A stretch of 64,000 nucleotides of DNA, from assembly GCF_902713615.1 (NCBI RefSeq), contig NC_052168.1:5580001-5644000 (forward strand), in the 5' to 3' direction. Each line of letters starts with the position of its first letter. Positions within the stretch are counted from its first letter, which is position 1. The notes under the pieces are model-generated. The model searched no databases and was not told where the DNA came from. It saw only the letters and a program-made list of their open reading frames with translations. Source of the stretch: Scyliorhinus canicula. Its lineage: Eukaryota. Both the position numbers and the translations under genes were made by a program. Below are positions 2,257 to 48,500 of this stretch, one piece after another.

Positions 2257-2854
2257 GGATCTTATGGTTATTACAGAATTCAATTCCCATGGATGCGATG
2301 GGGCTGAGACGTTGCCCATAAAGAGGGACCACTCTGCCATAAGTGAAGCTGGTACACACATCGGGAGGTCATTATCACTGAAGACAATGGACGTGAGTGC
2401 AGGCCGTGTGTGTGAGGGGGGCAACTGGTCAGATTCAATGCCAATTTCCCACCAGCAAGTTTAGAAAGAAAGAATTGCATTTATATAGAGCCTTTCACAA
2501 TCTCAGGATGTCCCAGAGTGCTGCACAGCCAATGAACTACGTTCGAAGCATAGTCACTGTTGTAACGTGGGAAATGCACAGTAAGCTCCCACGAAATTCA
2601 GCATGACAATGGCCAGATCATCGGTTTGTACGTTGTTGGTTGAGGGATGAATGTTGGCCCGGACATGGACGGGGGATGGGGGACGGGGGTCGGGGGAGGG
2701 GCGTGGGATCTCCCCTGCTCTTCTCCCAAGTAGTCCCCATGGGATCGTTAACAGCCTCCTGAGCGAGTAGACCTTGGTTCAATGTTTCATCCGACAGACG
2801 GCATCTCTTGACAGTGCAGCACTCTCTCAGCGTCAGCCTGGATTTAGGTTACAA

Positions 2855-3417
2855 CTAGACGTGAATGTAGGAGGGTTGATCAGTAAGTTCGTGGATGATA
2901 CAAACCTTAATGGGGGGATAAATAGTGATGAGGGTAGCTTTAGATTACAGGAGCATAAAGACGGGCTGGTCAGATGGGCTGATCAGTGGCAAATGGAATT
3001 CAATCGGGATAAGTGTGAGGTGATGCACTTGGGCAGGGCAAACAAGAAAATATGTGATAAACGGCAAGACCCTGGGGTGGTGATATGCATAAAGCAATTC
3101 TGAACATAATATTAAACACAACCTCTGACCACTAGGTGGCAGTGTAAACCCACCACCTGTCCCTGGGCCTGGGGAGTTGGGAGTAAGTCGTGTTGGAGGA
3201 TAGACGTATTTTGCAGTCGCTCTATAGCAGTTAGTGAGGGTTAGTAGTTTATTATTTTATTGATCCTAGTTATCGTTATCACCCAGTTGTTTTATAATAA
3301 ATTATTTAAACTAGATGTTCTGTAGCTCATCATTCATATCGGCCAGTGTACAGAACATGACGCTTGGGAATCACCGAGGATCAGAGGGACGTTGGTGTGC
3401 ACAAACACTGGTCCCTT
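2855..3417 (+). mobile_element. CR1 LINE RT fragment, host of a solo LTR and the R2-like insertion; resumes at 4629-4661
   Basis: ISKFVDDT...WADQWQMEFNRDKCEVMHLGR peptide, then CR1-type QRDxGV...SL sequence that continues as (V)AEQV...VVKK after 4628. Confidence 0.9.
3078..3362 (+). mobile_element. Probable solo LTR inserted in CR1, carrying a CTCF-like motif
   Basis: Interrupts CR1 coding sequence; begins TG; AATAAA near 3296; CCACTAGGTGGCAG at 3129-3142. Confidence 0.5.
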
Positions 3418-3649
3418 CGGGAGTAACTATGACTCTCTTAACGAGGATGGGAGTCTCCGACGCGTCCTGGCTACGCCGATGTTAGTTGGATTCTACCCAG
3501 GAGACTGGGTCTGTTCATAGTTACAGTAACCACGGGAATCTTACCCTAAGCACCTATTCTATACCGTGGTGAGTTGCGCCTCCACGTCGGTCCCGCCGGG
3601 CAACGGTTCCTATGAAGGGGTAGAGATGGAGGAACCGGCTAAAGCAACT
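3418..3649 (+). ncRNA. HDV-like (R2-type) self-cleaving ribozyme
   Basis: P1 (GG)CGGG 3418-3421 / CCCGCC 3592-3597; P2 AGTTGC 3572-3577 / GCAACT 3644-3649; P3 GCC 3578-3580 / GGT 3589-3591; L3 TCCACGTC; P1.1 CC/GG; P4 CGGTTCCT 3604-3611 / AGGAACCG 3630-3637; J4/2 GCTAAA with catalytic C3639. Confidence 0.88.
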
Positions 3650-4628
3650 GGTCGAGAATTTTCGGCCGATAGAAATAAGCGTGTGCATGGTACAGAGGCC
3701 TACATGTTGGGTGACCAATATGGAGGTAACCATGCTAGTAGTTGCAGGAATCTGCTGGTTCTTTACTGCAATGAGTCGCACCTCAGCGATGGGGGCACGC
3801 GCTGTTCGACGACCTCCTGATTTATCAGATTGGTTGCACACATGTCGACTGGCCGAGACCAGCAAAACCATGCTAGTACCCTCGTCCGCAAAATTTTAAA
3901 AAAGTTTGATCTTCGGATGGTGCGTGTTCCGACGCGTCCTGGCTACGCCGATGTTAGTTGGACACCACCCAAGTGACGAGGGGAGCGCATGATGCCTTTT
4001 ACCATTCTGAGGATGACGGCCCGAATGGGCAAACTTCAATGCCCAAGACCCAGCTGACGTCCGGGAGGTCGGAACGAGGTCGGAACACGGACAAGTGCTC
4101 GGATACGTCTCGACTGCCCTTCGTTGGTTGGCCTTGGTGGTGGAACGTAGTAGGGTTCTGGCGAACCCATAGAACATTGAATTTGACATTCGGTATCATC
4201 TGTCTGAACCCCGAAGGGCCGGGTGACGACGGGTGAATGACCTCTCCCGGGATGTGCGAGAGGGACAGTTACGCCTAATATGTATGTGAAGCTCGCGGTT
4301 GTTGTTATATTAATGTGTGTGTGAAATAAAAATCCTATTGTGATCAAATGATGATCGTCATTCTGTACCTGCGGGTCAGATGACACAAAGGGTTGGCCGT
4401 CTCCGGACAGACTTAAATACATCTAACCGGTTCTCAGCTCACATTTGGTGGGTGGTGACACCACGCTTGGTATCCCGCGGAATTAAAGGTCATTTTATAC
4501 TGAATCAATTAAGATCACCCCGGTCCACCAACACAGTTCCGGCTGTGGTCACTTGCTAAGGTGGTAGTACAAATCGTCGACGAGCGACGTAAAGACTCGG
4601 AATTGGCACTCTCCGGAGTGTGGTTAAA
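3418..4628 (+). mobile_element. Non-autonomous R2-retrotransposon-derived element (SIDE-like) with 28S-derived 5' leader
   Basis: CGGGAGTAACTATGACTCTCTTAA (28S up to the R2 site) at 3418-3441; HDV-like ribozyme; 3' end GGTTAAA followed by TAGC; cleanly interrupts a CR1 reading frame; no RT ORF. Confidence 0.8.
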
Positions 4629-5106
4629 TAGCAGAGCAGGTGGGAAAGTGGTTAAGAAGGCCCGCTCAGTTAGGGGTTGTCAATCCACTTCAGGATAGGC
4701 CTCCAGGATACAGCTGTGTGCACAACCCTGGAGGGAAATCATTCGGACATTAAAAAATGTATGCTTTTATCATATTCTTTGAACATTTCTCTTTACCACA
4801 CATTAAAAACCTTAAAAATGGGGGGGGAAAAAGGCAGTTGTAGCTTTGACCACCTGCCTCTGCTACCCTCCCACTCTGTCACCCCCCCCCCCCCCACCCC
4901 CATTCCCACCACGCCTTCTCCCCACAATCACCCCCCCCCCCCCCCGGCCCCCCCCCCCCCCCCCCCCCCCCCCCCGGCCCCCCCCCCCCCCCCCCATCCC
5001 TTAACAAGGGAAAACTACACAGTATAAAACCTGGGACCTGGTCGGGGAGAATGACCCTTCGGGAAGAGGAGCAATAGTTTGGTTGTGTCTGTGTACACCG
5101 TAATAA

Positions 5107-5290: not shown

Positions 5291-5597
5291 TAAACCCGTC
5301 GTTCATTTCTGCCCTATCCTGTGTTCCTGTTGTCTCTCACGTTCAGGTTCCACAGCTCCCCGGCCATCACCTTCACAAGGGGCAAGTAGTGATGGGGAAT
5401 GAATGCCGGCCGTGTTACTGACTGTCCTGTGAGAGAATTTAAAAAAATGAATGGGCTGAATGGCCTCCTTCTGTGTTTTAGGGTGATGGGTACAGCAAAC
5501 CGAGAGGCAAGTGAATTTGGCAATGATTGGCTGGCTGTACGCAAACATTATTTGGTCAGGTTTTCATCCTCACGGACAGTCAAAAGCTTCTTGACGT

Positions 5598-6270
5598 GGC
5601 CCGGAATTCTCTGGCCCTTGGGATTCCGCCGTCGAGAATCCCGCCCATTATCCCAGGGTCAGGGGCCGGGGATTCTCCCAGCCCCCGTGCCGCTATCGCC
5701 CTCGGCGTGGGGCGGAGAATGGGGCGTCGGACCCACAATCGGGTCCGACGACGGTACGCGATTGTCTGGCGACTGGAGAATCGGCTCCAGCCGCGGGCGT
5801 GCGGTTGACGCGCGCCCCCGCGGTGGTTCTCCGCGGTCGACCGGCTGAGTTCCCGTCGAGTTCCGCCGGCGTGGTTCCCATATGGCTTCACCCGGCGGGA
5901 GCTCGGCGTCATGGCTACGGTGGCCGTTCTGGTTGGAGGGGGGGGGGGGGGGGGGCTCCACAATGGCCAGGCCCGCGGTCGGAGGCTACCGATTGGTGGG
6001 CTGGCGTAATCCGGGGGGGGGGAGGGTGTGCCTATCTTCTTCTGCGCCAGCCGCCGTGTGGCTCCGCCATGTTGCGCGGGGGCCAGCCTGAAAATGGACA
6101 CCGTGGGTATGTGGACTCGCGGCCGGAAGTGCAGTATCGGCAGCAGGAGCTGTACGGCACACTCCGGGGCCCTGCTCGTCCCCTTCACACCAAAGAATCA
6201 CTCCGGACTTTTTGAAAACATCTGGAGTGATTTGTGCAGGTTTTCTGCCGGGCGTGGGGGACATAGCCCC
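5598..6270 (-). mobile_element. GC-rich MITE (Harbinger-like family)
   Basis: GGCCCGGAATTCTC terminus and internal palindrome AATCACTCCGGA...TCTGGAGTGATT; same architecture as 28153 and 43163. Confidence 0.6.
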
Positions 6271-6336
6271 ATTTTCGAAGATTCCCGGTCAGGGTGCACG
6301 ATGGCTCAGTGGTTAGCACTGCTGCCTCAAGCCGGT

Positions 6337-24100: not shown

Positions 24101-24234
24101 CACACACACACAGACAGTATAACACTGCACACACACAGACAGTATAACACTGCACACACACACAGACAGTATAACACTGCACACACACACAGACAGTATA
24201 ACACTGCACACACACAGACAGTGTAACACTGCAC
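21177..24234. repeat. ~3-kb compound satellite: palindromic CAGTGT-A-ACACTG core separated by variable (CA)n spacers
   Basis: Direct inspection; the long Cys/Val ORFs here are artefacts of the repeat. Confidence 0.97.
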
Positions 24235-28152: not shown

Positions 28153-28677
28153 GGGGCGCGATTCTCTGCCCCCCACGCCGGGTGGGAGAATCGCCGGAGG
28201 GCCGGGTGAATCACGCCACGCCGCCCTGGCACCCCCCGCGATTCTCACCCCCCCCCCCCCCCCCCCCAAATGGTGTCTCGGGTGGGCCGAGCGGCCTGCC
28301 GAACACGACCGGTTCACGCCGGCGCCAACCATACCTGGTCGTTGCCGGCGTGAACAGCACGTGGCCGCTGTGTGTGGGGCCTGTGGGGGGGCGGAGGGAG
28401 GATCGAGCACCACGGCCATGCTCAGGAGGTGTCTGGCCCGCGATCGGTGCCCACCGATCGTCAGGCCTGCGTCTCTAAAAGACGCACTCTTTTCCCTCCG
28501 CCGCCCCGCAAGATCAAGCCGCCATGCCTTGCGGGGCAGCGGAGGGGAAGACGGCAACCGCGCATGCGCGGCTGACGTCACTTAGGCGCCGCGGCCACGT
28601 CATTCCCAGCGCGCCGCTTTGACGCAAGCGTCAAGGCCCGGCGCACAAAATTCACGCGCCGCCACTCCTAGCCCCCT

Positions 28678-28714
<37 letters not shown>

Positions 28715-28820
28715 GGGGGAGCGGGAATAGGGGGCGAGGAACGGCCTCCAACGCCGGAGTGAAACACTCCAGGTTTCACTCCGGCGTGGCTGTTTGTCTC
28801 CCTTTGGGAGAATTGCTTCC
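28153..28820 (+). mobile_element. GC-rich MITE with terminal inverted repeats (Harbinger-like)
   Basis: GGGCGCGATTCTC...GAGAATTGCTTCC ends, CTG flanking both sides, subterminal hairpin ACGCCGGAGTGAAAC/GTTTCACTCCGGCGT. Confidence 0.7.
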
Positions 28821-31800
28821 CTGCATTTCCATAGCGCCTTTCACAACCTCAAGATGTCCCAGAGAGCTTTACCGCCAATGCAATGCTTCGGAAGTGTAGT
28901 AGTCACTGTTGTAATGTAGGAAACATGTAAGCGGATTAGTGCATGGCAAGCTCCCACAAACAGCAATGTGATAATGACCAAATCTTTGCCATGTTGGCTG
29001 ATGGAGACACATAGACGCAGACAAGGATGAACACACCTATTTTGGTGTCTCGTGGCGCAATCCCTCCCTCTGAGCCAGAAGCTCCCTGTTCGTGTCCCAC
29101 TCCAGGCCTTGATGGCCAAGGAAAGTGCGACCACAACGCGGGCCAACAGGTTGAGTGTCAAACTGCAAAATCCTTCCAAACGCGGCAGTGGCTGGCGGTG
29201 GAGAGCGGGAGAGACTCCTGGTCAGCTACTCTTGCTGTGGTGTTGTGCCCCTCGATCTATAAGCCCCTGGTGACAGACACTCCAGGATTAACTAACTATG
29301 GGAACAGGAGAAAGAAGATCTCCCCCATTTCAATCACCGTATTTTCTGATGGTTAAACACCAGTACCTGGGGCATCTTTTCTGCTGTGTTGATTAATATG
29401 GCAATAACGCTGACTCAGTGTTCTAGTTGGCAATACAATTCAAATCCTGTTGTAGCTCACAGTGTGAAAATAATTGACTGATTAGATCAACCTTTGGAAT
29501 TCTGCGTTTGAACCTTCGCCTTGTGGACCCGGCAATTAATTCCAACTTTATTCCTCGTAAACAACTTAAATTGTTCACTTCTTTCTCGATCTTTTTGCGA
29601 AGTTCTACTAAAAAATACATTGGGCGTCTCCGTTCCTGAGACTGCGGGCTGGATTCGCTGCCGGCGGGACCCTCTGTTTCTCCGGCAGCGCACACACGCC
29701 CGGGGATTTCCTGGCGGCATGGGGGTGCCCACATTGGCTGGCTGCCAGGAGGGAGAATCCCGCCCTACGTGTTGGCGCCAGGGCAGGATCGTGGACTTCA
29801 TCAGGGTGGTATACACCCCGTGCCAAGCCAATAGATCTCAGTTCAAGGATATCGTTTTCGTTGAGTTGCGTGTTGCTATCTCATATGTAATGTTTCGGAA
29901 CAACTTTCCAAATTGCAGAAGAAGTTGCTCTCAATGTAGACTGCCAATAAAAATTACTTGTTTTTTAAAAAAATGTATTCTTTCATACACCAGAGGGCAT
30001 TGCTGGCTGGGGCCAGCATTTACTGCCCATCTCTAATTGCCCTTGATCTGGAGTCACATGTAGGCCAGACCAGGTAAGGACGGCAGATTTCCTGCCCTAA
30101 AGCCAGATGAGTTTTAATGATAATCGGCAATGGTGTCGGGGTTTATCATTTAGACTTTCAATTCCAGATTTTGATTGGATTCAAATTTCACCATCTGTAG
30201 TGTTGGGATTGGAACCCTGGGTCTTTGTATTATTAGTCCAATGACCAAGCCACTGCCTCCTCCTTGCCCGCCATAAATTCTTAAGATATAGGAGCAGAAT
30301 AAGCCCATTTGGCCCATCATGTCTGCTCCGCCATTCGATCTTGGCTGATATCATCCTGGCCTTAACTCCACCGTCCTGTCCGTTCTCCATAGCCCTTCAG
30401 CCCATTACCAATTATAAATCTGTCTAACTCCTCCTTAAATTTACTCACTGTCCCAGCATCCACTGCACCCTGCGTTAGCAAATTCCACAAATTCACAACC
30501 CTTTGGGAGAATTAGCTACCCCTCAACTCCGTTTTAAATTTACTACCTCTTATCCTAAGATTGTGACCTCTCGTTCCAGAATGCTCCACAGGACGAAGCA
30601 TCCGCTCCACGTCTACTTTATCCAAACATTTATCATCTTGTACACCTCAATTTGATCTCCCCACATTCTTCTAAACTGCTCAGTCTCTCTTCATACGACG
30701 AACCACTCATCTGTGTACATGCAACCACACAGCAGCTAGCCATGTACTGAAATAAACAGGCTGCTCACACAGGGCAGCACGGTTGCACAAGTGGTTAGCA
30801 CCGTGGCTTCACCGCGCCAGGGTCCCAGGTTCGATTCCCTGCTGGGTCACTGTCTGTGCCGAGTCTGTACGTTCTCCCCGTGTCTGCGTGGGTTTCCTCC
30901 GGGTGCTCCGGTTTCCTCCCACAGTCCAAAGACGTGCAGGTTAGGTGGATTGCCCATGCTAAATTACCCTTAGTGACCAAAAAGGTCAGGAGGGGTTACG
31001 GGGATAGGGTGGAAGCGAGGGCGTAAGTGGGTCGGTGCAGACTCGATGGGCCGAATGGCCTCCGTCTGCACTGTATGTTCTATTTCGGAAAGTTCAGTGA
31101 TTTTTAAATTGTAAGTTGCCCCTGGATGTTAAAGTAGGTGCCTGGTGGTACACCTGTCAGAAAGAGTTTAGGGAGAACTATTTCAGAGAACTGGCCACCG
31201 ACAGATGTTAGAACATAGAACATAGAACAGTACAGCACAGAACAGGCCCTTCGGCCCTCGATGTTGTGCCGAGCAATGATCACCCTACTCAAACCCACGT
31301 ATCCACCCTATACCCGTAACCCAACAACTCCCCCCCTTAACCTTACTATTAGGACACTACGGGCAATTTAGCATGGCCAATCCACCTAACCCGCACATCT
31401 TTGGACTGTGGGAGGAAATCGGAGCACCCGGAGGAAACCCACGCACACACGGGGAGGACGTGCAGACTCCACACAGACAGTGACCCAGCCGGGAATCGAA
31501 CCTGGGACCCTGGAGCTGTGAAGCATTTATGCTAATCACCATGCTACCGTGCTGCCCCCAAACCTTAGGGGAGGTTTTTTTCCCTCGTTTTGTTTGCTTT
31601 TTGGGGGGATCGTAAGCTCAACGTGAAGATGTCCACAGTTTGGAATCTAAAAGATTTGGTGGTATAGAGTTGTACTTGTGAAGTGGATTTGCTGTTTTAT
31701 AATGGAAAATGTCCTCAATTAAAATATTTTTAAAAGGAGAATTGAGATGGGGCACTGATGACGGGGTGTCTGTCCTGCAGCAATATTCCCTGATTGTTCC

Positions 31801-33410: not shown

Positions 33411-36400
33411 TGATGTCTCTTGAACATGTAGTTAGGCCACAGCTAAAATCCTGCGCGCAGTAAATGCTGTACAAGGAGGATGTGATGACATTAGAGAGGG
33501 TACGGAGGAGATTTGCAACTAAGCAAGAATTGGAGAATCGTCACTGTGAAGAAATGCTGGGATGAAGGAAGCTGAGGGAAGATTTACTTGAGGTGGATAA
33601 AATTATGAACAATCTGGATAGAGTGGATAGGGAGGCTCTGTTACTATTAGCAAGGAGCTCAATCATCAGGGACCATAGAGTTAACAAAACTGACAGAAGA
33701 GTTAGAGGGTTGCCAACCCTCCAGAATTGTTGGCCTGGAATCTGCCGGAATTGAAGATCGATCTCCAGAACACAGCTGTGCGCGACCCTGGAGAAACATC
33801 GTCGGGACATTAAAAAAAATATGGGTTTTTTTTCATTTCCTTTGAACATTTCTCTTGATCAGATTTTTTAAATATTGAAAATGGGAAATAAAGGCTGTTT
33901 CACGGACAGAAGTGCATTGTCCCATTGGGTAATGAGTCTCTCTGTTTTCCGATTGGTGAAGGGAGACCGTGCGTCACGAGGGTGGATGTGTTGGCCGGCT
34001 AGAGGGTGGAGCCTGGGGGCAGGTCTTGTGTTGAAACCTCCACTTGGGGGGGGGGGGGGGATTCTCCCGCCTCCCAGCCACATGTCTCTCGGCAACGGGA
34101 GCCGGCACGCCATTCGCTGGCGACCTGATTCTCTGCTCCAGCCGCTGCCAATGGGATTTCCCATTGATGCCACCCCACGGAGCTGGGAAACTATCAGGCG
34201 GGGGGGGGGCGTTACCGGCGGGAACAGCGAATCCCACAGTCAGCGAACGGCTGGTGGATTCTGGCTTTAATCACAGTTGTCAACCCGGATGTCTGTACCA
34301 ACATAAAGTACACACCAAGTTTTTTTTTTCCAATTAAGGGGCAATTTGGCGTGGCCAATCCACCCACCCTGCACATCTTTGGGTTGTGGGGTAAGCCCCC
34401 CACAGACACGGGGAGAATGTGCAAACTCCACACGGACAGTGACCCGGGACCGGGATCGAACCCGGGTCGTCGGCGCCGTGAAGCAGCAGTGCTAACTGCT
34501 GTGCCACTGTGCCGCCTCGTGCAGACTAAGATAAAGGGAACAATTCCTTCCAATGGCTCGAGGGAACCCCACCACCTGGAGGTTCCCCTCCGAGTCACTC
34601 ACCACCCCGAGTTGGAAATATATCGGCCATTCATTCGCTGTCGCTGGGTCAAAATCCTGGAACTCCCTCCCTAACAGCACAGTGGGTGTACCTACACCTG
34701 AAGGACTGCAGCGGTTCAAAAGGCAGCTCACCACTACCTTATGAAGGGTAATTAGGGATGGGCAATAAAAGCTGGCCTAGCCAGCCACGCCCACATCCCG
34801 TAAATTAATTTTCATAAAAAGATTCATCATAGGATGTACAGTGCAGAAGGAGGCCATTCGGCCCATCGAGTCTGCACCGGCTCTTGGAAAGGGCACCCTA
34901 CCCAAGGTCAACACCTCCACCCTATCCCCATAACCCAGTAACCCCACCCAACACTAAGGGCAATTTTGGACACTAAGGGCAATTTATCATGGCCAATCCC
35001 CCTAACCTGCACATCGTTGGACTGTGGGAGGAAACCGGAGCACCCGGAGGAAACCCACGCACACACGGGGAGGATGTGCAGACTCCGCACAGGCAGTGAC
35101 CCAAGCCGGAATCGAACCTGGGACCCTGGAGCTGTGAAGCAATTGTGCTGACCACAATGCTGCCGTGCTGCCCTAAACATAGGGCACAGCAGGCCTATGC
35201 TTCTTATTCACTGAGCAATTGGTCATCTCTGATTCTTCGACCTCTCTCTGGTTTTTATTCCCACTTAATTTACTGTGAGACCAAAAGTCAATTTCCCGAT
35301 GTCACAATTAACTTTTGGAATTTTGATCTCGGGATCATAATAATAATCTTTATTAGTGTTAGTATTTATGAGTATTATTATTATTAGTGTCACAAGTCGG
35401 CTTACATTAACACTGCAATGAAGTTACTGTGAAAAGCCCCTAGTCGCCACATTCCGGCGCCTGTTCAGGTACACAGAGGGAGAATTCAGAATGTCCAATT
35501 CACCTAACAAGCACGTCTTTCGGGACTTTGTGGGAGGAAACCGGAGCACCCGGAGGAAACCCACGCAGACACGGGGAGAACGTACAGACTCCGCACAGAC
35601 AGTGACCCAAGCCGGGAGTCGAACCCGGGTCCCTGGCGCTGTGAAGCCACAGTGCTAACCACTGTGCTACCGTGCCGCCATAAAGGCGGGCGAGAGAGGA
35701 GTCAAATTTCCTGGCAAACAATGTCGGGGGAATTTCCTTCCGCCTGCTTTATCACGTCCTGCTCGCTCTTTGAAAGGTCACCTCTCCGGCATTAATTTAT
35801 TTCCCCGCGAAATTAAATTCCCCGCCTGTGGGAAATTGGGATGGTCACTGTGTGTAAATGGCGAGCACCTGGCGAGTAGAGGCTCCCATGAGGTAATGGT
35901 GGTGGGGAGGGCAACATCACTGCTCACCCATCCGTCAGATTCGTCGTGGTCCGCACAGGTGCATTAATGAGCTGAACAGCGCAAGATCGCACGTGTCCAG
36001 CTGTCCCCAGGAGGAACCACTCCTACTTACACGCCTGGTACCGAATTTGGATTTCAGAGCGTATGATTTCACCCAATGTTGACCCTTTATCAGATCAGAT
36101 CAGCCATTTACACATTCTTTATACTTTCTAATGGTTTTGGTTAATTCAATGTTTCTACCGATAGCTGAATTAAAATTTAATCTCAGTCGTTTACATTTCA
36201 TTTTTTAAAAAAAATTTAGAGTACCCAATAAATTTTTTCCAATTGAGGGGCAATTTAGCATGGCCAATCCACCTAGCCTGCACATCTTTGGAGGAAACCC
36301 ACGCAGACATGGGGAGAACGTGCAGAGAGGTTTACAATTCATCTACATTGGTGGCACGGTAGCACAGCGGTTAGCACTGTTGCTTCACAGCGCCAGGGTC

Positions 36401-42400: not shown

Positions 42401-42493
42401 GAGGGTGGGATATCTCTATTGCCCAGTGTATATAAGGTTGGGCAGTAAATCACCGACAAGAGCAGTACCCAGCAGGGATCAACCAGGGAGCAT

Positions 42494-43040
42494 GTGATGA
42501 ACAGTCGCTGTGGATATAAGCGGGGAAACCAAACAGTGTGAAGATGCTGTGCAGTGCCTTGATCACGGAGGCCGAGGTCATATCGGGGCAGGGGACAGCA
42601 AAAGGGAAGCGGAAGAACTCATCGATAACGGTGAGGAAGTAGATGTTGCGGTTGGTGGACGGGAGGGGCCCTTTGAAGTCCACGCTTAGTCGCTCAAAGG
42701 GCCCAGAGGCCTTTATCAGGCGGGCCTTGTCTGGTCGATAGAATTGCGGTTTGCATTCCGCACAGATCTGGCATGCCTTAGTCATGGCCTTGACCTCCCC
42801 TGTGGAGTAGGGTAGGTTGCGGGACTTGATGAAGTGGGCAAGCCGGGTGACCCCCGGGTGGCAGAGGTCATCGGGGATGGATCTCAGGCGGTCCAATTGC
42901 GCATTGGCGCACATGCCGCGGGACAGGGCATCTGGGGACTCGTTGAGCTTCCCCGGGCAATATTTAATGTCATACGTATAGGTGGAGAGCTCTATTCTCC
43001 ACCTCAGAATTTTGTCATTCTTTATTTTGCCCCATCTTCT
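42494..43040 (-). mobile_element. Gypsy LTR-retrotransposon pol fragment (RNase H end, integrase zinc finger and core start)
   Basis: RWRIELSTYTYDIKYCPGKLN..DALSR, CHPG...CQIC, PFERLSVDFKGPLP, LTVIDEFFRFPFA, LFGFPAYIHSD. Confidence 0.92.
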
Positions 43041-43162
43041 AGGAGCTGCTGCCGGATGTACGAGGACATGATACCGGACACAAGGGCGTCGCGAATATGC
43101 AAGTTCCTGTGGTGTTCGGATCAACCAGGGAGCATAAATATACTGTTTGTAAATAAAACTTT

Positions 43163-43823
43163 GGGCGCGATTCTCCGCACCCCACGCCGGGTGGGAGAAT
43201 CGCGGGAGGGGCGGGCGAATCACGACACGCCGCCCTGGCGACCCCCGCGATTCTCCCACCCCCCCAAAATGGTGTGTCGCGTTTGTTGACAGGCCGCTCG
43301 GAGAATCGCCGCTTGCCGTTTCTCAAGGCCGCCGGCGATTCTCCGGCCCGGCCGAGCGGCCTGCCGAACCCGACCGGTTCACGCCTGCGCCAACCACACC
43401 TGGTCGCTGCTGGCGTGAACAGCGCGCGACAGGTGAGTGTGGAGCCTGTGGGGGGCGGAGGGAGGATCGAGCACCATGGGCGTGCTCAGGAGGGGTCTGG
43501 CCCACGATCGGTGCCCACCGAACGTCGGGCCGGCGTCTCTAAAAGACGCACTCTTTTCCCTCCGCCGCCCCGCAAGATCAATCCTCCATGTCTTGCGGGG
43601 CAGCAGAGGGGAGATGGCAACCGCGCATGCGCCGGGCTGCGCTTAGGTCACTTAGGCGCCGCCGGCCGCGTCATTCCCGGCGCCCGAGATTCACGCGCCG
43701 CCGCTCCTAGCCCCCTGGGGGGGGGGGAATAGGGGTCGAGGAGCAGCCTCCGACGCTGGAGTGAAACACTCCGGGTTTCACTCCGGCGTCGGCTGTTTGT
43801 CTCCCGATGGGAGAATTCCGCCC
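43163..43823 (+). mobile_element. GC-rich MITE, second copy of the 28153 family
   Basis: TIRs GGGCGCGATTCTCC / GGAGAATTCCGCCC, TTT flanking both sides, colinear with 28153-28820. Confidence 0.75.
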
Positions 43824-45489
43824 TTTGTTCTTACTTTCACTTGGTTTAGATTCCCGTGCCCTCATTAAAATGATGAGATTTAAGAATAGCCCAATGCCAT
43901 ATCCCCGGGATCAAATTAATCAAATCTAATGAAAGGGCAGCTCGGTGGCGCAGTGGTTACCACTGCCGCCTCATGGCGCCAGGTTCGATCCTGCCTCTGG
44001 GTCGCTGTCCGTGTGGAGTTTGCACATTCTCCCCGTGTCTGCGTGGGTTTCGCCCCCACAACCCAAAGATGTGCAGGGTAGGTGGATGGGCCCCTTAATT
44101 GGAAAAAATGAATTGGGTACTCGAAACGTATAAAAAAGATCAACTCTAATGATTTTTATACATTGAATCCTGACCTAGACGATATTTTACTCTGCTTTTT
44201 TTTTCTATCTTCTATTGTGTTTTTTTATATTTTACTTGGAAAAATGATTGATTGTAAAATTTGGTCCTCGCCCACGACGGAAGGTGATTTTTACTGAAGA
44301 GATGAATGAAACGGAAATGGGTCCTGTGTCAGGCAAAAGGGCAGCAGTTTACAAACAGAATTAGTTTGCAACTTCCAAGTACAGATGGGGGGAGGGGGGG
44401 GGGGGGGGGGGGGTTGGGGGGGGGGGAGGGGGGAGTAGACAAAACTGGTTCTTCCTGCCCCATAAATATATTGTGGATAGCCACCCACCTTTATCCCTGC
44501 CCGCAATTTAGCGTGGCCAATCCACCTACCCTGCACATCTTTGGGTTGTGTGGGTGAGACCCACGCAGACACGGGGAGAATGTGCAAACTCCACACGGAC
44601 AGTGACCCGGGACCGGGATCGAACCTGGGTCCTTGGCGCTGTGATGCAGCAGTGCTAACCACTGCGTGACCGTGCCGCACACTCATGCTCACCTTTTAAC
44701 ACATACAAACATACATACAAATTAGGAGCCAAAGTAGACCACTCGGCCCCTCAAACCTGCTCCGCCATTCAATAGGATCATGGCGTCGAGTCACTGGATA
44801 TTTAGCACCGCCTGGGTAGCTCTTACTGCCTCTCGCATTTTCTGAGCACTGGGCGGTTTGCCGACTGGATTCTGCAAATGGTTTGGGTCAGAGCAGAAGG
44901 TGCGCCAGCCATTTCAAACCCCTTTTTGGGCATAGATCTAAAATCACCGCTGTTCACTGAAATCCTTGAGTGGGTCTTGAACACCCACTCAGAGGTAAAG
45001 GTGAGACAGACCAACGCAAGTGTGCCCGCCTTGTAGTGGCAGCATCACAGCTGTGATTTTTAAAAATTCTTTCTTGGGATGGTAGAATCCCTGGCAAGGT
45101 TGGTATTTATCACCCATCCTTAGTTGCCCCTTGAGGAAGGTGGTGGTGAGCCGCCTTCTTGAACCGCTGCAGTCCGTGTGGTGTAGGTACACCCACAGTG
45201 CTGTTAGAGAGGGAGTTCCAAGATGCTGATCCCACGACGCTGTGGCAATGGCTGATGTATTTCCAAGTCAGGATGTTGGGTGGTTCAGAGGGGAACTCAT
45301 CGGTGATGATGTCCCCCATGCATCTGTTGCCCTTCTCCTTAATAATTATTAACAATAATCTTTATTATTGTCACAAGTAGGCTTACATTAACACTGCAGT
45401 GAAGTTACTGTGAAAATTCCCCAGTCGCCACACTCCGACGCCTGTTCGGGTACAGGGAGGGAGAATTCAGGATGTCCAATTCACCTAAT

Positions 45490-46499: not shown

Positions 46500-46600
46500 G
46501 AACCCAAACTTCGATACCTCGAACTCCCATTTTAGTTTGGAAAAAAACAAATTTTTTTTTTCAACACTTTGCCAACAACAACAACAACAGCAGCAACAGG

Positions 46601-48500
46601 ATGGCTTCTCAAATCCGCCAGAATTATCACCAGGAGTGCGAGGCAGCGATGAACCGCCAAATCAACATGGAGCTGTACGCTTCCTATGTCTACATCTCGA
46701 TGGTGAGGCCAGAGATATTTACTATGTGGGTGGAGGGATTCTGAATTGGGGGGGGGGGGTATTGAGCTGGCTGGGGCATTCTGTTTTTAATTGTAACCAT
46801 CGACGGGGTTGGGGGGAAAATCGGATCTTGCGGGGCAATCCTCTGGTCTAGGAGAAGGGCGTTGTTGCTTTTGTCTCCAGTACAAAGACTAGTCCCAAGG
46901 CTAGTTGGCCTCTCGCACATAATGTGCTTGTTTAAAGCTTTAAAAGTGCTCAGGTGAAAACCTTAACTGGGTGGAGAGCTGTGGCTGGCCTTGTCAATTT
47001 CCACTGGGTCAATTTCAGTAAAAACCTTACAGGGCGGAGAGCTGTTGCTGGCCTTGTCAATTTCCAGCGGATTGGAGAAATTGAACGAGTCTGGAGAAGT
47101 TTGTGTGCCTGGTTTCACGTAACACTTTTTTTTCTCTTCTCTCTTTCCCTTTGTCCCTCTCCCTCCCAGTACGCCTTCTTCGACAGGGACGATGTCGCCC
47201 TGAAGAACTTCGCCAAGTTCTTCAAAGACCAGTCCCACGAGGAAAGGGAACATGCAGAGAAGCTGATGAAATTCCAAAACCAGCGTGGGGGACGTGTTAT
47301 CCTGCAGGATGTCTCGGTTAGTACAAAAGGACTGACTTCCCACACGCCATGCCTCACTCGAGTCTCTCTCTTGTGTAGTCTAATTCTTTTTTTTTTCTTT
47401 CCCCTCCCCCTAGAAACCTGACCGCGATGAATGGAGCAATGGTCTCGAAGCCATGAAATGTGCTCTTCACTTGGAGAGAACCGTGAATCAGTCTCTCTTG
47501 GACCTCCACAAACTGGCTTCTGACAAGTTCGATGCACAAGTATGTATGGACCTCCCTCTGATTCCTTTGTTCTACCCAAGGCCAGTTTTTCTTGTTCTTT
47601 TTTAAACCCCTCCCAGGTTCAGTGTGGACTGTAGAAATGTTTTTCATCCAGCAATTGTTTTTTAAAATAATAACAGTAAACTTTTTTTTACAATCTATTT
47701 AACCTGCACATCTTTGGGTTGTGGGAGTGAAACCCACACACACACACACACACACACAGGTGCAAAGTCCACACGGACAGTGAATCGAATGTGGGTCCTC
47801 AGTGCTGTTGTTCCAGTGCTAACCACTGTCACATGCTGCTCTTTACCTAGCAAGTATTATCATTTTAAAAAAAAATTGTTTAAAAAAAAAAAATACCAAG
47901 ACAAGGGGCCAGGCTACTATCTACTTGAACCCAAGATTTTTCTTGAGGCAGATGTTTGGCTGGGGCTGGTTTAGCTCACTCGGCTAAATCGCTGGCTTTT
48001 AAAGCAGGCCAGCAGCACGGTTCGATTCCCGTACCAGCCTCCCCGGACAGGCGCCGGAATGTGGTGACTAGGGGCTTTTCACAGTAACTTCATTGAAGCC
48101 TACTCGTGACAATAAGCGATTTTCATTTTTTCATTGGGATAATGCTGAAATTGTTTAAAATCTCCAATCATTTTATGCTGACAAATATAAATTGTCCTCC
48201 CAGGACATCAACAACTAACTGGTTATGTGTTGTCCAGCATTTAATCGAAGACTTGATTAAGTACTGCACTAGCTGAACAATAAGTGTCTGAGGTTCATTA
48301 AAGCCATGCATATTAACAACACTGTCTTTTTAAATTTCTTCCAGATGTGTGATTTTCTGGAGACTCACTACTTGGATGAGCAGGTCCAGTCTATTAAGAA
48401 GCTTGGCGATTTCGTCACCAACCTGGTTCGTCTGGGGGCTCCCCAGAATGGTATGGCCGAGTATCTGTTTGACAAGCACAGTCTGGAAGAGAGCAGTTAA
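46601..48500 (+). CDS. Ferritin B, heavy/middle-type subunit, 176 aa; join(46601..46702,47170..47316,47414..47539,48345..48500)
   Basis: Four GT-AG exons of 102/147/126/156 nt; MASQIRQNY...[10 protein letters not shown]...[12 protein letters not shown]; ferroxidase residues E27, Y34, E61, E62, H65, E107, Q141 (human H numbering) intact. Confidence 0.97.

What the first reader, a model, noticed from the sequence alone, without database searches (positions are those of the whole stretch)
3418..4632. Non-coding R2-retrotransposon derivative carrying 28S rRNA leader, inserted outside rDNA
Seen: the insert begins with CGGGAGTAACTATGACTCTCTTAA and ends GGTTAAA|TAGC. It is ~1.2 kb and CpG-rich relative to its flanks, and I see no RT, zinc-finger or endonuclease ORF in it. 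Known: that 24-mer is the 28S rRNA sequence immediately upstream of the R2 site (TTAAGG|TAGC); loss of GG at the 5' junction is typical of R2; non-autonomous short internally deleted R2 elements (SIDEs) were described in Drosophila. Inference: this is a SIDE-like parasite of a cartilaginous-fish R2. It was co-transcribed from rDNA, released by its ribozyme, and retrotransposed in trans into the ferritin locus. I do not know of a described vertebrate example, but cannot check novelty.
Basis: partly seen in the sequence, partly recalled or inferred. Interest (0 to 1): 0.9.

Follow-up and report, generated by a model that had tools for sequence, protein, structure and literature searches.

The report
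ORF-less shark R2 parasite, off-target copy
This 1.2 kb insert is a protein-less derivative of the ribosomal-DNA retrotransposon R2 that keeps only R2's self-cleaving ribozyme and its 3' recognition module, is abundantly transcribed (probably from a twin copy in the 28S gene), and here landed by mistake in a LINE remnant that mimics the 28S target.

Summary

- **The insert.** Window 3418-4628 starts with 24 nt identical to 28S rRNA positions -26 to -3 from the R2 site. It ends GGTTAAA|TAGC, has CpG o/e 1.01 against about 0.5 in the flanks, and has no ORF over 128 aa and no Pfam domain.
- **5' module.** It carries a complete HDV-like ribozyme core (3572-3649). Its P1 partner CCCGCC pairs with 28S GGCGGG at -28, the commonest R2 cleavage site. 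The copy starts 2 nt short of that site.
- **3' module.** The last 52 nt are 83% identical to the 3' end of a full-length A-lineage R2 of zebra shark, including the hairpin/pseudoknot motif.
- **A second copy in rDNA.** Public RNA and DNA contigs of the same species hold the body with 0-1 differences, at high RNA depth, and run from its 3' end into 28S (TAGC-CAAATGCCTCGTC...).
- **The target.** Paralogues show the empty site ...TCCCTTAAGG|TAGCAG..., a 13/14 mimic of the 28S target made by LINE codons S-L-K-V-A.

Not shown: the rDNA 5' junction, the autonomous partner in this genome, and ribozyme activity.

The first stage of this scan had already noted this same stretch, its ribozyme and its target mimic, and other R2 copies outside rDNA in this genome.

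Verdict: first vertebrate SIDE-like R2 found in the open literature searched; a new member of a known kind.

The parts
3418..3441 (+). [quoted passage not shown] It is the remnant of the 5' end of a ribozyme-processed co-transcript. The first two G of the predicted -28 end are missing.
   Evidence: shark 28S flanks
3442..4628 (+). Body of the ORF-less R2 derivative (1187 nt).
   Evidence: No ORF over 128 aa and no Pfam domain. CpG o/e 1.01 for the whole insert 3418-4628. RNA and DNA contigs 3461-3962 and 3933-4632 match with 0-1 differences.
3445..3505 (+). First copy of an internal direct repeat. It begins 3 nt into the body and lies inside the ribozyme's J1/2 loop.
   Evidence: alignment score 77 against 20 +/- 2 for shuffles
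3572..3649 (+). HDV-like self-cleaving ribozyme core. P2 is 3572-77:3644-49, P3 is 3578-80:3589-91, L3 is 3581-88. The P1 3' strand CCCGCC is 3592-97, P1.1 is 3598-99:3582-83, P4 is 3605-10:3631-36. The putative catalytic C is 3639. The P1 5' strand is 28S GGCGGG, of which only CGGG (3418-21) survives in this copy.
   Evidence: Rfam RF00094 (21.7 bits, E 2.3) and RF02682 (16.5 bits) hit the same place, 3566-3651. All helices check as canonical pairs. Compared with shark R2 ribozymes. PMC3774820.
3915..3977 (+). Second copy of the internal direct repeat (35 nt exact, about 90% over 50 nt), 472 nt after the first.
   Evidence: The repeat breaks the 31-mer contigs at 3461/3962/3933.
4560..4628 (+). 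R2 3'-UTR terminal module. Hairpin GUCG 4576-79 / CGAC 4585-88. Loop CGAG 4581-84 is complementary to CUCG 4596-99 (pseudoknot). Hairpin CACUC 4607-11 / GAGUG 4616-20. Tail UGGUUAAA.
   Evidence: Second hairpin, tail and the CUCG position checked by script; the first hairpin and the pseudoknot pairs read by eye from the sequence (the coordinates scripted for them were off by one and failed). 43/52 identity of 4577-4628 to the R2-1_STig 3' end, and TCGACGAGCGA is also in teleost R2 3' UTRs. The last 65-67 nt suffice for TPRT in R2Tg (PMC12222951).
4629..4632 (+). TAGC, the downstream half of the target mimic and the site that primed reverse transcription.
3365..3417 (+). Upstream flank: LINE reverse-transcriptase C-terminal remnant ending ...TGGTCCCTT. 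The next 4 nt of the target (AAGG) were lost on insertion.
   Evidence: Paralogue contigs read ...GGTCCCTTAAGG|TAGC. The reconstructed site translates as ...DQRDVGVHKHWSLKVAEQVGK....
4633..4760 (+). Downstream flank: continuation of the same LINE remnant.
   Evidence: paralogue at 33763-33885
2774..3046 (+). The same LINE remnant further upstream (..FVDDT..WQMEFNRDKCEVMHLGRANK).
   Evidence: RVT_1 E 0.0013, below Pfam's cut-off

Best explanation
The insert is a non-autonomous, SIDE-like derivative of an A-lineage cartilaginous-fish R2 retrotransposon. It keeps only the two RNA modules R2 needs in cis.

Steps:
(1) A master copy with the same sequence sits at the R2 site of a 28S gene and is co-transcribed with rRNA.
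(2) Its HDV-like ribozyme pairs CCCGCC with 28S GGCGGG and cuts the co-transcript 28 nt upstream of the R2 site. The element RNA therefore carries a 28S leader.
(3) R2 protein, supplied in trans by an autonomous R2, binds the 3' pseudoknot module.
(4) In this event the R2 endonuclease nicked a look-alike site, TCCCTTAAGG|TAGC, formed by the codons S-L-K-V-A of a LINE reverse-transcriptase remnant, and primed reverse transcription on TAGC.
(5) The cDNA was copied to within 2 nt of the RNA 5' end and joined with loss of 4 nt (AAGG) of target.

The copy here is a dead end. It has no rRNA promoter upstream, and its P1 helix has only 4 of 6 pairs and lacks the cleavage-site G.

Shown: the anatomy, the homology of both ends to R2, an identical expressed sequence joined to 28S at its 3' end, and the target mimic. 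Inferred: self-cleavage, the trans-acting protein, and the order of events.
For: **Leader.** 24 nt of 28S at 3418-3441.

**Ribozyme.** Two Rfam HDV models place their cores at 3566-3651. All helices are canonical, and P1 is 6/6 only when the two missing G of 28S are restored. PMC3774820 states that R2 P1 most often uses 28S -28 to -22 and that J1/2 ranges from 23 to over 700 nt; here J1/2 is 150 nt. The core shares GGTCCCGCCGG and GGCTAA with stingray R2-1_HSa, while P2 covaries: AGUUGC:GCAACU here against GAGCCA:UGGCUC.

**3' module.** 43/52 identity to zebra-shark R2-1_STig. The first pair of the conserved hairpin shows a compensatory change, G:C here and A:U there. The motif TCGACGAGCGA recurs in teleost R2 3' UTRs. 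In R2Tg the last 65-67 nt are sufficient for TPRT.

**rDNA copy and expression.**
- Contigs 3461-3962 and 3933-4632 have 0-1 differences at depth 97-564 in RNA-type runs of different samples.
- Flank depth is about 0.
- The 3' contig continues into CAAATGCCTCGTCATCTAATT in X18, X7 and DNA run X1.
- DNA depth is about 9-11 in the element against about 5.4-5.8 at the ectopic junction and unique flank.
- Five RNA runs hold 6/6 sampled words of 3418-3520.

**Real insertion.** A contig from sample S1, which is not the sample flagged as the probable assembly source (S16), bridges the ectopic 5' junction, 3309-3485.

**Target mimic.** At least 12 paralogue contigs read ...CCCTTAAGG|TAGC..., and the site translates as S-L-K-V-A.

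**Second leader.** A diverged relative carries a leader starting at -27 (GCGGGAGTAACTGGGATCTCTTAA) right after a ribozyme (X2 loose end at 3658).

**Older lineage.** Diverged copies (about 85-92%) at single-copy depth cover most of the element. One spans the internal repeat boundary, 3844-4119.
Against: - The 5' junction of the rDNA copy was never seen. No contig was laid on 3418-3460 in RNA runs, possibly because contigs holding 28S are filtered as human-like.
- The last ~66 nt appear to be shared with at least one other R2 lineage. That lineage's contigs in X7 stop at 4596-97, and a variant with changes at 4550, 4573 and 4574 reaches depth ~60 in X1. So 31-mer contigs cannot strictly phase the ORF-less body to the 28S junction.
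- DNA depth suggests only about one extra identical copy per haploid genome, so this is a very small 'family'.
- The autonomous partner in this genome was not retrieved. Only unverified first-stage notes and the higher-depth 3'-end variant point to it.
- The Rfam scores are far below the gathering thresholds, because the P1 strand lies 150 nt away.
- Comparisons with published shark R2 UTRs were made by eye on text from a supplement, not by a scored alignment.
- The internal 60-nt repeat, and a relative in which 4448-4548 precedes 3515-3614, are not explained by a simple internal deletion.
Confidence: 0.75

Rival explanations
1. A one-off, recent deletion derivative rather than a SIDE-like lineage. 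A single R2 copy in rDNA lost its ORF, and its RNA was accidentally copied once to this site. There would be no history of propagation as a parasite.
For: DNA depth indicates only about one further identical copy. The ectopic copy is identical to the expressed sequence over about 1170 nt, so only one very recent event is documented. An isolated internally deleted R2 copy is on record in budgerigar (PMC5035012).
Against: Diverged copies (about 85-92% identity) at single-copy depth cover 3426-3614, 3844-4261, 4250-4409 and 4448-4548. One contig crosses the internal repeat boundary at 3915. This suggests the ORF-less architecture is older than the last event. A second leader-bearing relative exists.
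Confidence: 0.17
2. The deletion arose during this very insertion. A full-length R2 RNA was reverse transcribed with an internal template switch, and the abundant RNA comes from this ectopic copy, not from rDNA.
For: R2 reverse transcriptase is known to jump templates (PMC3414825). 31-mer contigs cannot phase the body to the 28S junction, because the last ~66 nt are shared with another lineage.
Against: RNA depth in the unique flanks is about 0, while the element reaches 97-564. There is no promoter or terminator reason for a transcript to begin and end at the element's borders. DNA depth is about twice single-copy.
Confidence: 0.05
3. An assembly artefact, or a DNA-level capture of an rDNA fragment (segmental duplication or repair patch) rather than retrotransposition.
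For: rDNA-derived sequence is often misplaced in assemblies.
Against: A contig from a sample other than the one flagged as the probable assembly source bridges the 5' junction at single-copy depth. The 28S part starts within 2 nt of the predicted ribozyme cut. The insert ends exactly at the R2 3' end on a TTAAGG|TAGC mimic, with no 28S sequence downstream. A DNA fragment would carry arbitrary 28S flanks on both sides.
Confidence: 0.03

Closest known systems
R2 SIDEs of Drosophila (R2Dwi_SIDE; Eickbush & Eickbush 2012, PMC3414825)
   Same: An R2 5' ribozyme joined to an R2 3' end with no ORF, and a central part without recognisable R2 coding sequence. It is co-transcribed with 28S and presumed to be mobilised by R2 protein in trans.
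   Different: - Vertebrate (shark A-lineage) rather than insect.
- 1.2 kb rather than 0.5 kb.
- The ribozyme cuts at -28 in 28S rather than at the element's first base, so the RNA carries a leader.
- No poly(A) tail.
- It contains an internal 60-nt duplication of its own 5' start.
- Very low copy number.
- This copy lies outside rDNA.
Full-length A-lineage shark and ray R2s (R2-1_STig, R2-1_HSa, R2-1_CMax; PMC13188248)
   Same: - Ribozyme core motifs GGUCCCGCCGG and GGCUAA.
- 5'-UTR stretch ..CTGGGT..ATAGTTACAG.
- 3'-terminal hairpin/pseudoknot module, 43/52 identical to R2-1_STig.
- 5' junctions with small 28S deletions.
   Different: Those elements encode the ZnF-Myb-RT-endonuclease protein of about 1000-1300 aa. 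This one encodes nothing. Outside the conserved modules the sequences are not alignable by eye.
R2-2_MUn of budgerigar (Kojima et al. 2016, PMC5035012)
   Same: An internally deleted vertebrate R2 copy whose 5' end is flanked by sequence weakly similar to 28S.
   Different: It is described as a single degraded copy. No expressed rDNA twin, ribozyme analysis or target-site analysis was reported.
Sow-bug R2 5' junctions with a 24-bp duplication of upstream 28S (Eickbush et al. 2013, PMC3774820)
   Same: A 24-nt block of 28S from just upstream of the R2 site is retained at the element's 5' end, together with a 4-bp target deletion.
   Different: There the junction lies in rDNA and is uniform for the family. 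Here it marks an off-target insertion in a LINE.

Membership tests
R2 retrotransposon lineage (derived from) | 3' junction with 28S at TTAAGG|TAGC | tested here: met
   Contigs run from 4632 into CAAATGCCTCGTCATCTAATT in X1, X18 and X7. Caveat: the last ~66 nt are shared with another R2 lineage.
R2 retrotransposon lineage (derived from) | HDV-like ribozyme at the 5' end, with P1 formed with 28S -28..-22 or with the element's own start | tested here: met
   Core at 3572-3649 with all helices canonical, and P1 6/6 with 28S GGCGGG. Motifs are shared with shark R2 ribozymes and P2 covaries. Catalytic activity is not testable here.
R2 retrotransposon lineage (derived from) | 3'-UTR terminal RNA module recognised by R2 protein | tested here: met
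   43/52 identity to the R2-1_STig 3' end, plus the hairpin/pseudoknot pairs (and by eye on the sequence). Protein binding is not testable.
R2 retrotransposon lineage (derived from) | Single ORF with zinc fingers, Myb, RT and restriction-like endonuclease (autonomy) | tested here: not met
   Longest ORF is 128 aa and no Pfam family was found. [quoted passage not shown]
   The rDNA 5' junction was not seen.
SIDE (short internally deleted element) | Several copies with R2-type junction variation, showing propagation by TPRT | tested here: inconclusive
   Two identical copies at different sites (rDNA and this LINE), plus diverged copies at single-copy depth. Junctions of the other copies were not recovered.
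SIDE (short internally deleted element) | Co-resident autonomous R2 with a related 3' end that supplies the protein | tested here: inconclusive
   A 3'-end variant (changes at 4550, 4573, 4574) at depth about 60 against about 11 in X1. First-stage notes report R2-A copies elsewhere in the genome. No ORF-bearing copy was retrieved.
L1/CR1-type processed retrocopy | Poly(A) or microsatellite tail and a target-site duplication | tested here: not met
   It ends GGTTAAA with no tail. The target lost 4 nt instead of being duplicated.

The most novel reading that the evidence does not exclude
Sharks may harbour an active non-autonomous R2 lineage that dominates R2-related RNA. In X7 its depth is about 244, against 5-14 for other R2 3' ends. 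The R2 machinery may also escape rDNA repeatedly through a built-in reservoir of pseudo-targets: the codons S-L-K-V-A of a high-copy LINE family spell TTAAGGTAGC. That would make LINE remnants a genome-wide landing pad for a supposedly site-specific element. It would also give a natural data set on the off-target rules of A-lineage R2 enzymes now being engineered for gene insertion.
Probability: 0.25. Interest if true: 0.7.

Novelty: new member of a known kind. Interest (0 to 1): 0.5.

Why it matters
Non-autonomous R2 parasites (SIDEs) are on record only in Drosophila. R2 itself was reported in cartilaginous fish only recently (one shark R2 in 2016; a 2026 survey presents its own as the first), with no ORF-less forms.

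This element extends the phenomenon to vertebrates. It also supplies three natural 'experiments':
- **A fossilised RNA 5' end.** It places in-vivo ribozyme cleavage within 2 nt of the predicted -28 site.
- **A minimal vertebrate R2 passenger.** It consists of the ribozyme and the ~67-nt 3' module, matching what engineering of avian R2 found sufficient.
- **A documented off-target integration.** The site shares only 13/14 core bases and 4 nt of downstream homology with 28S. This bears on the specificity of A-lineage R2 proteins used for transgene insertion.

Tried and rejected
- **Rfam on the insert.** Only sub-threshold HDV hits and no R2 3'-UTR family hit. I kept the ribozyme call only because all helices check and published shark R2 cores match.
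- **Second ribozyme.** I looked for one after the second repeat copy and found none.
- **Second GGTCCCGCCGG.** The one at 29661-29671 (-) is a plain GC hairpin, not a ribozyme.
- **Empty-site paralogue inside the window.** None found. The mimic was recovered from read contigs instead.
- **rDNA 5' junction.** A second read laying on 3395-4660 laid nothing on 3418-3460 in RNA runs. The indirect word test supports the junction but does not prove it.
- **The look-up of encoding contigs.** Run on three element ORFs to fetch rDNA-context contigs: not on record (one search had a coordinate slip, corrected).
- **The search of earlier findings.** By sequence it returned nothing, and by words it returned only titles.
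- **Exact motifs of this element.** They are absent from the (truncated) R2 table of PMC13188248, so the parent R2 is not among the sequences held there.
- **Not done.** I did not run the large protein searches, because no R2 protein sequence was available by reference. I did not identify the species.

Full report
**1. What is in the sequence**

The window reads ...CACTGGTCCCTT|CGGGAGTAACTATGACTCTCTTAA|CGAGGATGG... at 3418, and ...GGAGTGTGGTTAAA|TAGCAGAGCAGG... at 4628/4629.
- The leader is unique in the window and not expected by chance.
- It equals shark 28S from -26 to -3 relative to the R2 site, as printed for several sharks in Table S2 of PMC13188248...AAACGGCGGGAGTAACTATGACTCTCTTAAGG|TAGCCAAATGCC....
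- The insert has CpG o/e 1.01 against 0.49-0.57 around it, at the same G+C.
- Its longest ORF is 128 aa, and ten ORF translations hit no Pfam family.

**2. The 5' module is an R2-type ribozyme**

Two Rfam HDV-ribozyme models place their cores at 3566-3651 (RF00094, 21.7 bits; RF02682, 16.5 bits). Both are below threshold because they force a local P1.

Read as an R2 ribozyme, the helices are all canonical:

| Element | Coordinates / sequence |
|---|---|
| P2 | AGUUGC 3572-77 : GCAACU 3644-49 |
| P3 | GCC : GGU |
| L3 | UCCACGUC |
| P1.1 | CC : GG |
| P4 | GGUUCC : GGAACC |
| J4/2 | GGCUAAA, with the putative catalytic C3639 |
| P1 3' strand | CCCGCC 3592-97 |

The partner of the P1 3' strand is 28S GGCGGG at -28..-23. 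This is 6/6 pairs in a co-transcript but 4/6 in this copy, where the two leading G are replaced by TT.

Eickbush et al. [quoted passage not shown] Here J1/2 is 150 nt.

The stingray R2-1_HSa core shares GGUCCCGCCGG and GGCUAA, while its P2 covaries (GAGCCA:UGGCUC). Zebra-shark and catshark cores have the same layout (compared by eye).

The copy therefore begins 2 nt inside the predicted cleavage product. A diverged relative in DNA run X2 has a leader starting at -27, directly behind a ribozyme (loose end at 3658). This is a second record of the same RNA 5' end.

**3. The 3' module is an R2 3' end**

Positions 4577-4628 match the last 52 nt of the full-length, three-zinc-finger R2-1_STig at 43/52. 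The match includes TCGACGAGCGA and GTAAAGACTCGGAA. The first motif recurs in teleost R2 3' UTRs.

The region forms these features:
- a hairpin, GUCG/CGAC, whose first pair is G:C here and A:U in zebra shark;
- a loop, CGAG, complementary to a downstream CUCG;
- a second hairpin, CACUC/GAGUG;
- an A-rich tail.

The second hairpin and tail were checked by script. The first hairpin and the pseudoknot pairs were read by eye after the scripted coordinates proved off by one.

In zebra-finch R2 the last 65-67 nt, a pseudoknot plus hairpin, are necessary and sufficient for TPRT (PMC12222951).

**4. A twin copy in rDNA, expressed**

Logan contigs of the same organism were laid on the window.
- **RNA-type runs.** Runs from different samples (X4, X18, X7, X14) hold 3461-3962 with 0-1 differences, and X4, X18 and X7 also hold 3933-4632 with none. 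Depths are 97-564 in these three (23 in X14). The contigs break only at the internal repeat.
- **Flanks.** Depth in the unique flanks is about 0.
- **28S junction.** In X18, X7 and DNA run X1 the 3' contig continues into CAAATGCCTCGTCATCTAATT, which is 28S downstream of the R2 site.
- **DNA depth.** In X1 the ectopic 5' junction contig (3309-3485) has depth 5.4 and the unique flank 5.8, against 9-11 inside the element. That is about one further identical copy per haploid genome.
- **Independent sample.** The contig across the ectopic junction comes from sample S1. Sample S16 is the one flagged as the probable source of the assembly. The insertion is therefore real.
- **Leader in RNA.** Five RNA runs hold 6/6 sampled words of 3418-3520. 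By my own estimate, there is about a 90% chance that at least one of those words spans the leader/body joint. So the same joint is probably present in RNA.

**5. Caveats**
- No contig was laid on 3418-3460 in RNA runs. Contigs rich in 28S may be removed by the human-likeness filter, so the rDNA 5' junction is unseen.
- The last ~66 nt appear to be shared with at least one other R2 lineage. That lineage's contigs stop at 4596-97 in X7, and a variant with changes at 4550, 4573 and 4574 has depth about 60 in X1. So 31-mers cannot strictly phase the body to the 28S junction.

**6. The target**

Paralogue contigs of the flanking repeat read ...GGTCCCTTAAGG|TAGC... (1 contig each in X4 and X18, 3 in X1, 7 in X2).

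The flank is the C-terminal part of a LINE reverse transcriptase (..FVDDT..WQMEFNRDKCEVMHLGRANK; RVT_1 E 0.0013). The reconstructed site translates as ...HWSLKVAEQVGK....

The codons S-L-K-V-A give TCCCTTAAGGTAGC, which is 13/14 identical to 28S TCTCTTAAGGTAGC. Downstream homology ends after TAGC.

Insertion removed AAGG from the target. There is no target-site duplication and no poly(A). This is the signature of R2 target-primed reverse transcription, not of L1/CR1-type retrocopying or DNA-level capture.

**7. Age and fate**

Three things point to a very recent event:
- the copy is identical to the expressed sequence over about 1170 nt;
- one site (3829 A/G) is polymorphic among runs;
- the CpGs are undecayed.

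This copy lacks a Pol I context and the cleavage-site G, so it is presumably inert.

**8. Is it a SIDE?**

By the criteria of Eickbush & Eickbush 2012 (PMC3414825):

| Criterion | Result |
|---|---|
| Ribozyme + R2 3' end + no ORF + R2-site residence | Met |
| Propagation as a family | Partly met: diverged copies at about 85-92% cover most of the element, one crossing the internal repeat boundary, but copy number is very low |
| Co-resident autonomous R2 | Not demonstrated: only the higher-depth 3'-end variant and unverified first-stage notes of R2-A copies elsewhere |

**9. Unexplained**
- The 60-nt duplication of the element's own 5' start (3445-3505 and 3915-3977).
- A relative in which 4448-4548 is followed, after 78 nt, by 3515-3614.

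Both hint at a tandem or template-switch origin rather than a simple deletion.

**10. Novelty**

The literature searches found SIDEs only in Drosophila. They also found one internally deleted R2 copy in budgerigar. The 2026 survey that presents itself as the first report of Chondrichthyes R2s mentions no non-autonomous form; an angel-shark R2 was already listed in 2016.

The element is a new member of a known kind, with some value for R2 biology and R2-based genome engineering. The species was not identified. The cartilaginous-fish assignment rests on the UTR homologies.

Noticed in passing
window 3077-3364: A block of about 290 nt is absent from most paralogues of the LINE remnant. Contigs join 3046 to 3365 through about 30 LINE letters. 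The block is itself very high-copy (DNA contig depth up to about 4250). It is probably a nested SINE-like insertion just upstream of the R2 derivative.
   Followed up: partly
window 3658 (loose end in DNA run X2): A diverged relative continues after the ribozyme with CATA + GCGGGAGTAACTGGGATCTCTTAA + TG... This is a degenerate 28S leader starting at -27 directly behind a ribozyme module. It looks like an in-vivo template jump or tandem R2 product.
   Followed up: no
window 4448-4548 and 3515-3614 (X1 contig): One 291-nt DNA contig of a diverged relative has the 3' region followed, after 78 other letters, by the ribozyme region. The order is permuted relative to this copy. Together with the internal 60-nt repeat, this suggests tandem or circularly permuted arrangements in the family.
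   Followed up: no
window 4531-4632: In DNA run X1 a variant of the 3' end (4550 C>A, 4573 A>C, 4574 T>A) has about 5 times the depth of this element. This is the candidate 3' end of the autonomous R2 of this genome.
   Followed up: partly
window 4850-5000, also 13270-13610, 28675-28725, 44385-44435: Long poly-C tracts interrupted by GG or A, repeated at several places in the window.
   Followed up: no
window 5550-6300: A CpG-island-like stretch (G+C 0.66-0.71) lies about 1 kb downstream of the insert. Its long ORFs had no Pfam hit.
   Followed up: partly
window 21173-24234: A 3-kb minisatellite of about 120 copies of a 25-27-nt unit (CACACACACAGACAGTGTAACACTGCA). It explains the stop-free ORFs of 692-1049 aa there.
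   Followed up: yes
window 46600-47600 (+): Exons of a ferritin heavy-chain-like gene ([31 protein letters not shown]....[19 protein letters not shown]....[14 protein letters not shown]..), 42 kb from the insert.
   Followed up: partly
window 42450-43256 (-): An ORF with an integrase core domain (rve, E 2e-08), i.e. an LTR-retroelement or DNA-transposon remnant.
   Followed up: no
window 29661-29671 (-): A second exact GGTCCCGCCGG, inside a GC-rich hairpin (GCTGCCGG...CCGGCAGC). It has no HDV-like features.
   Followed up: yes
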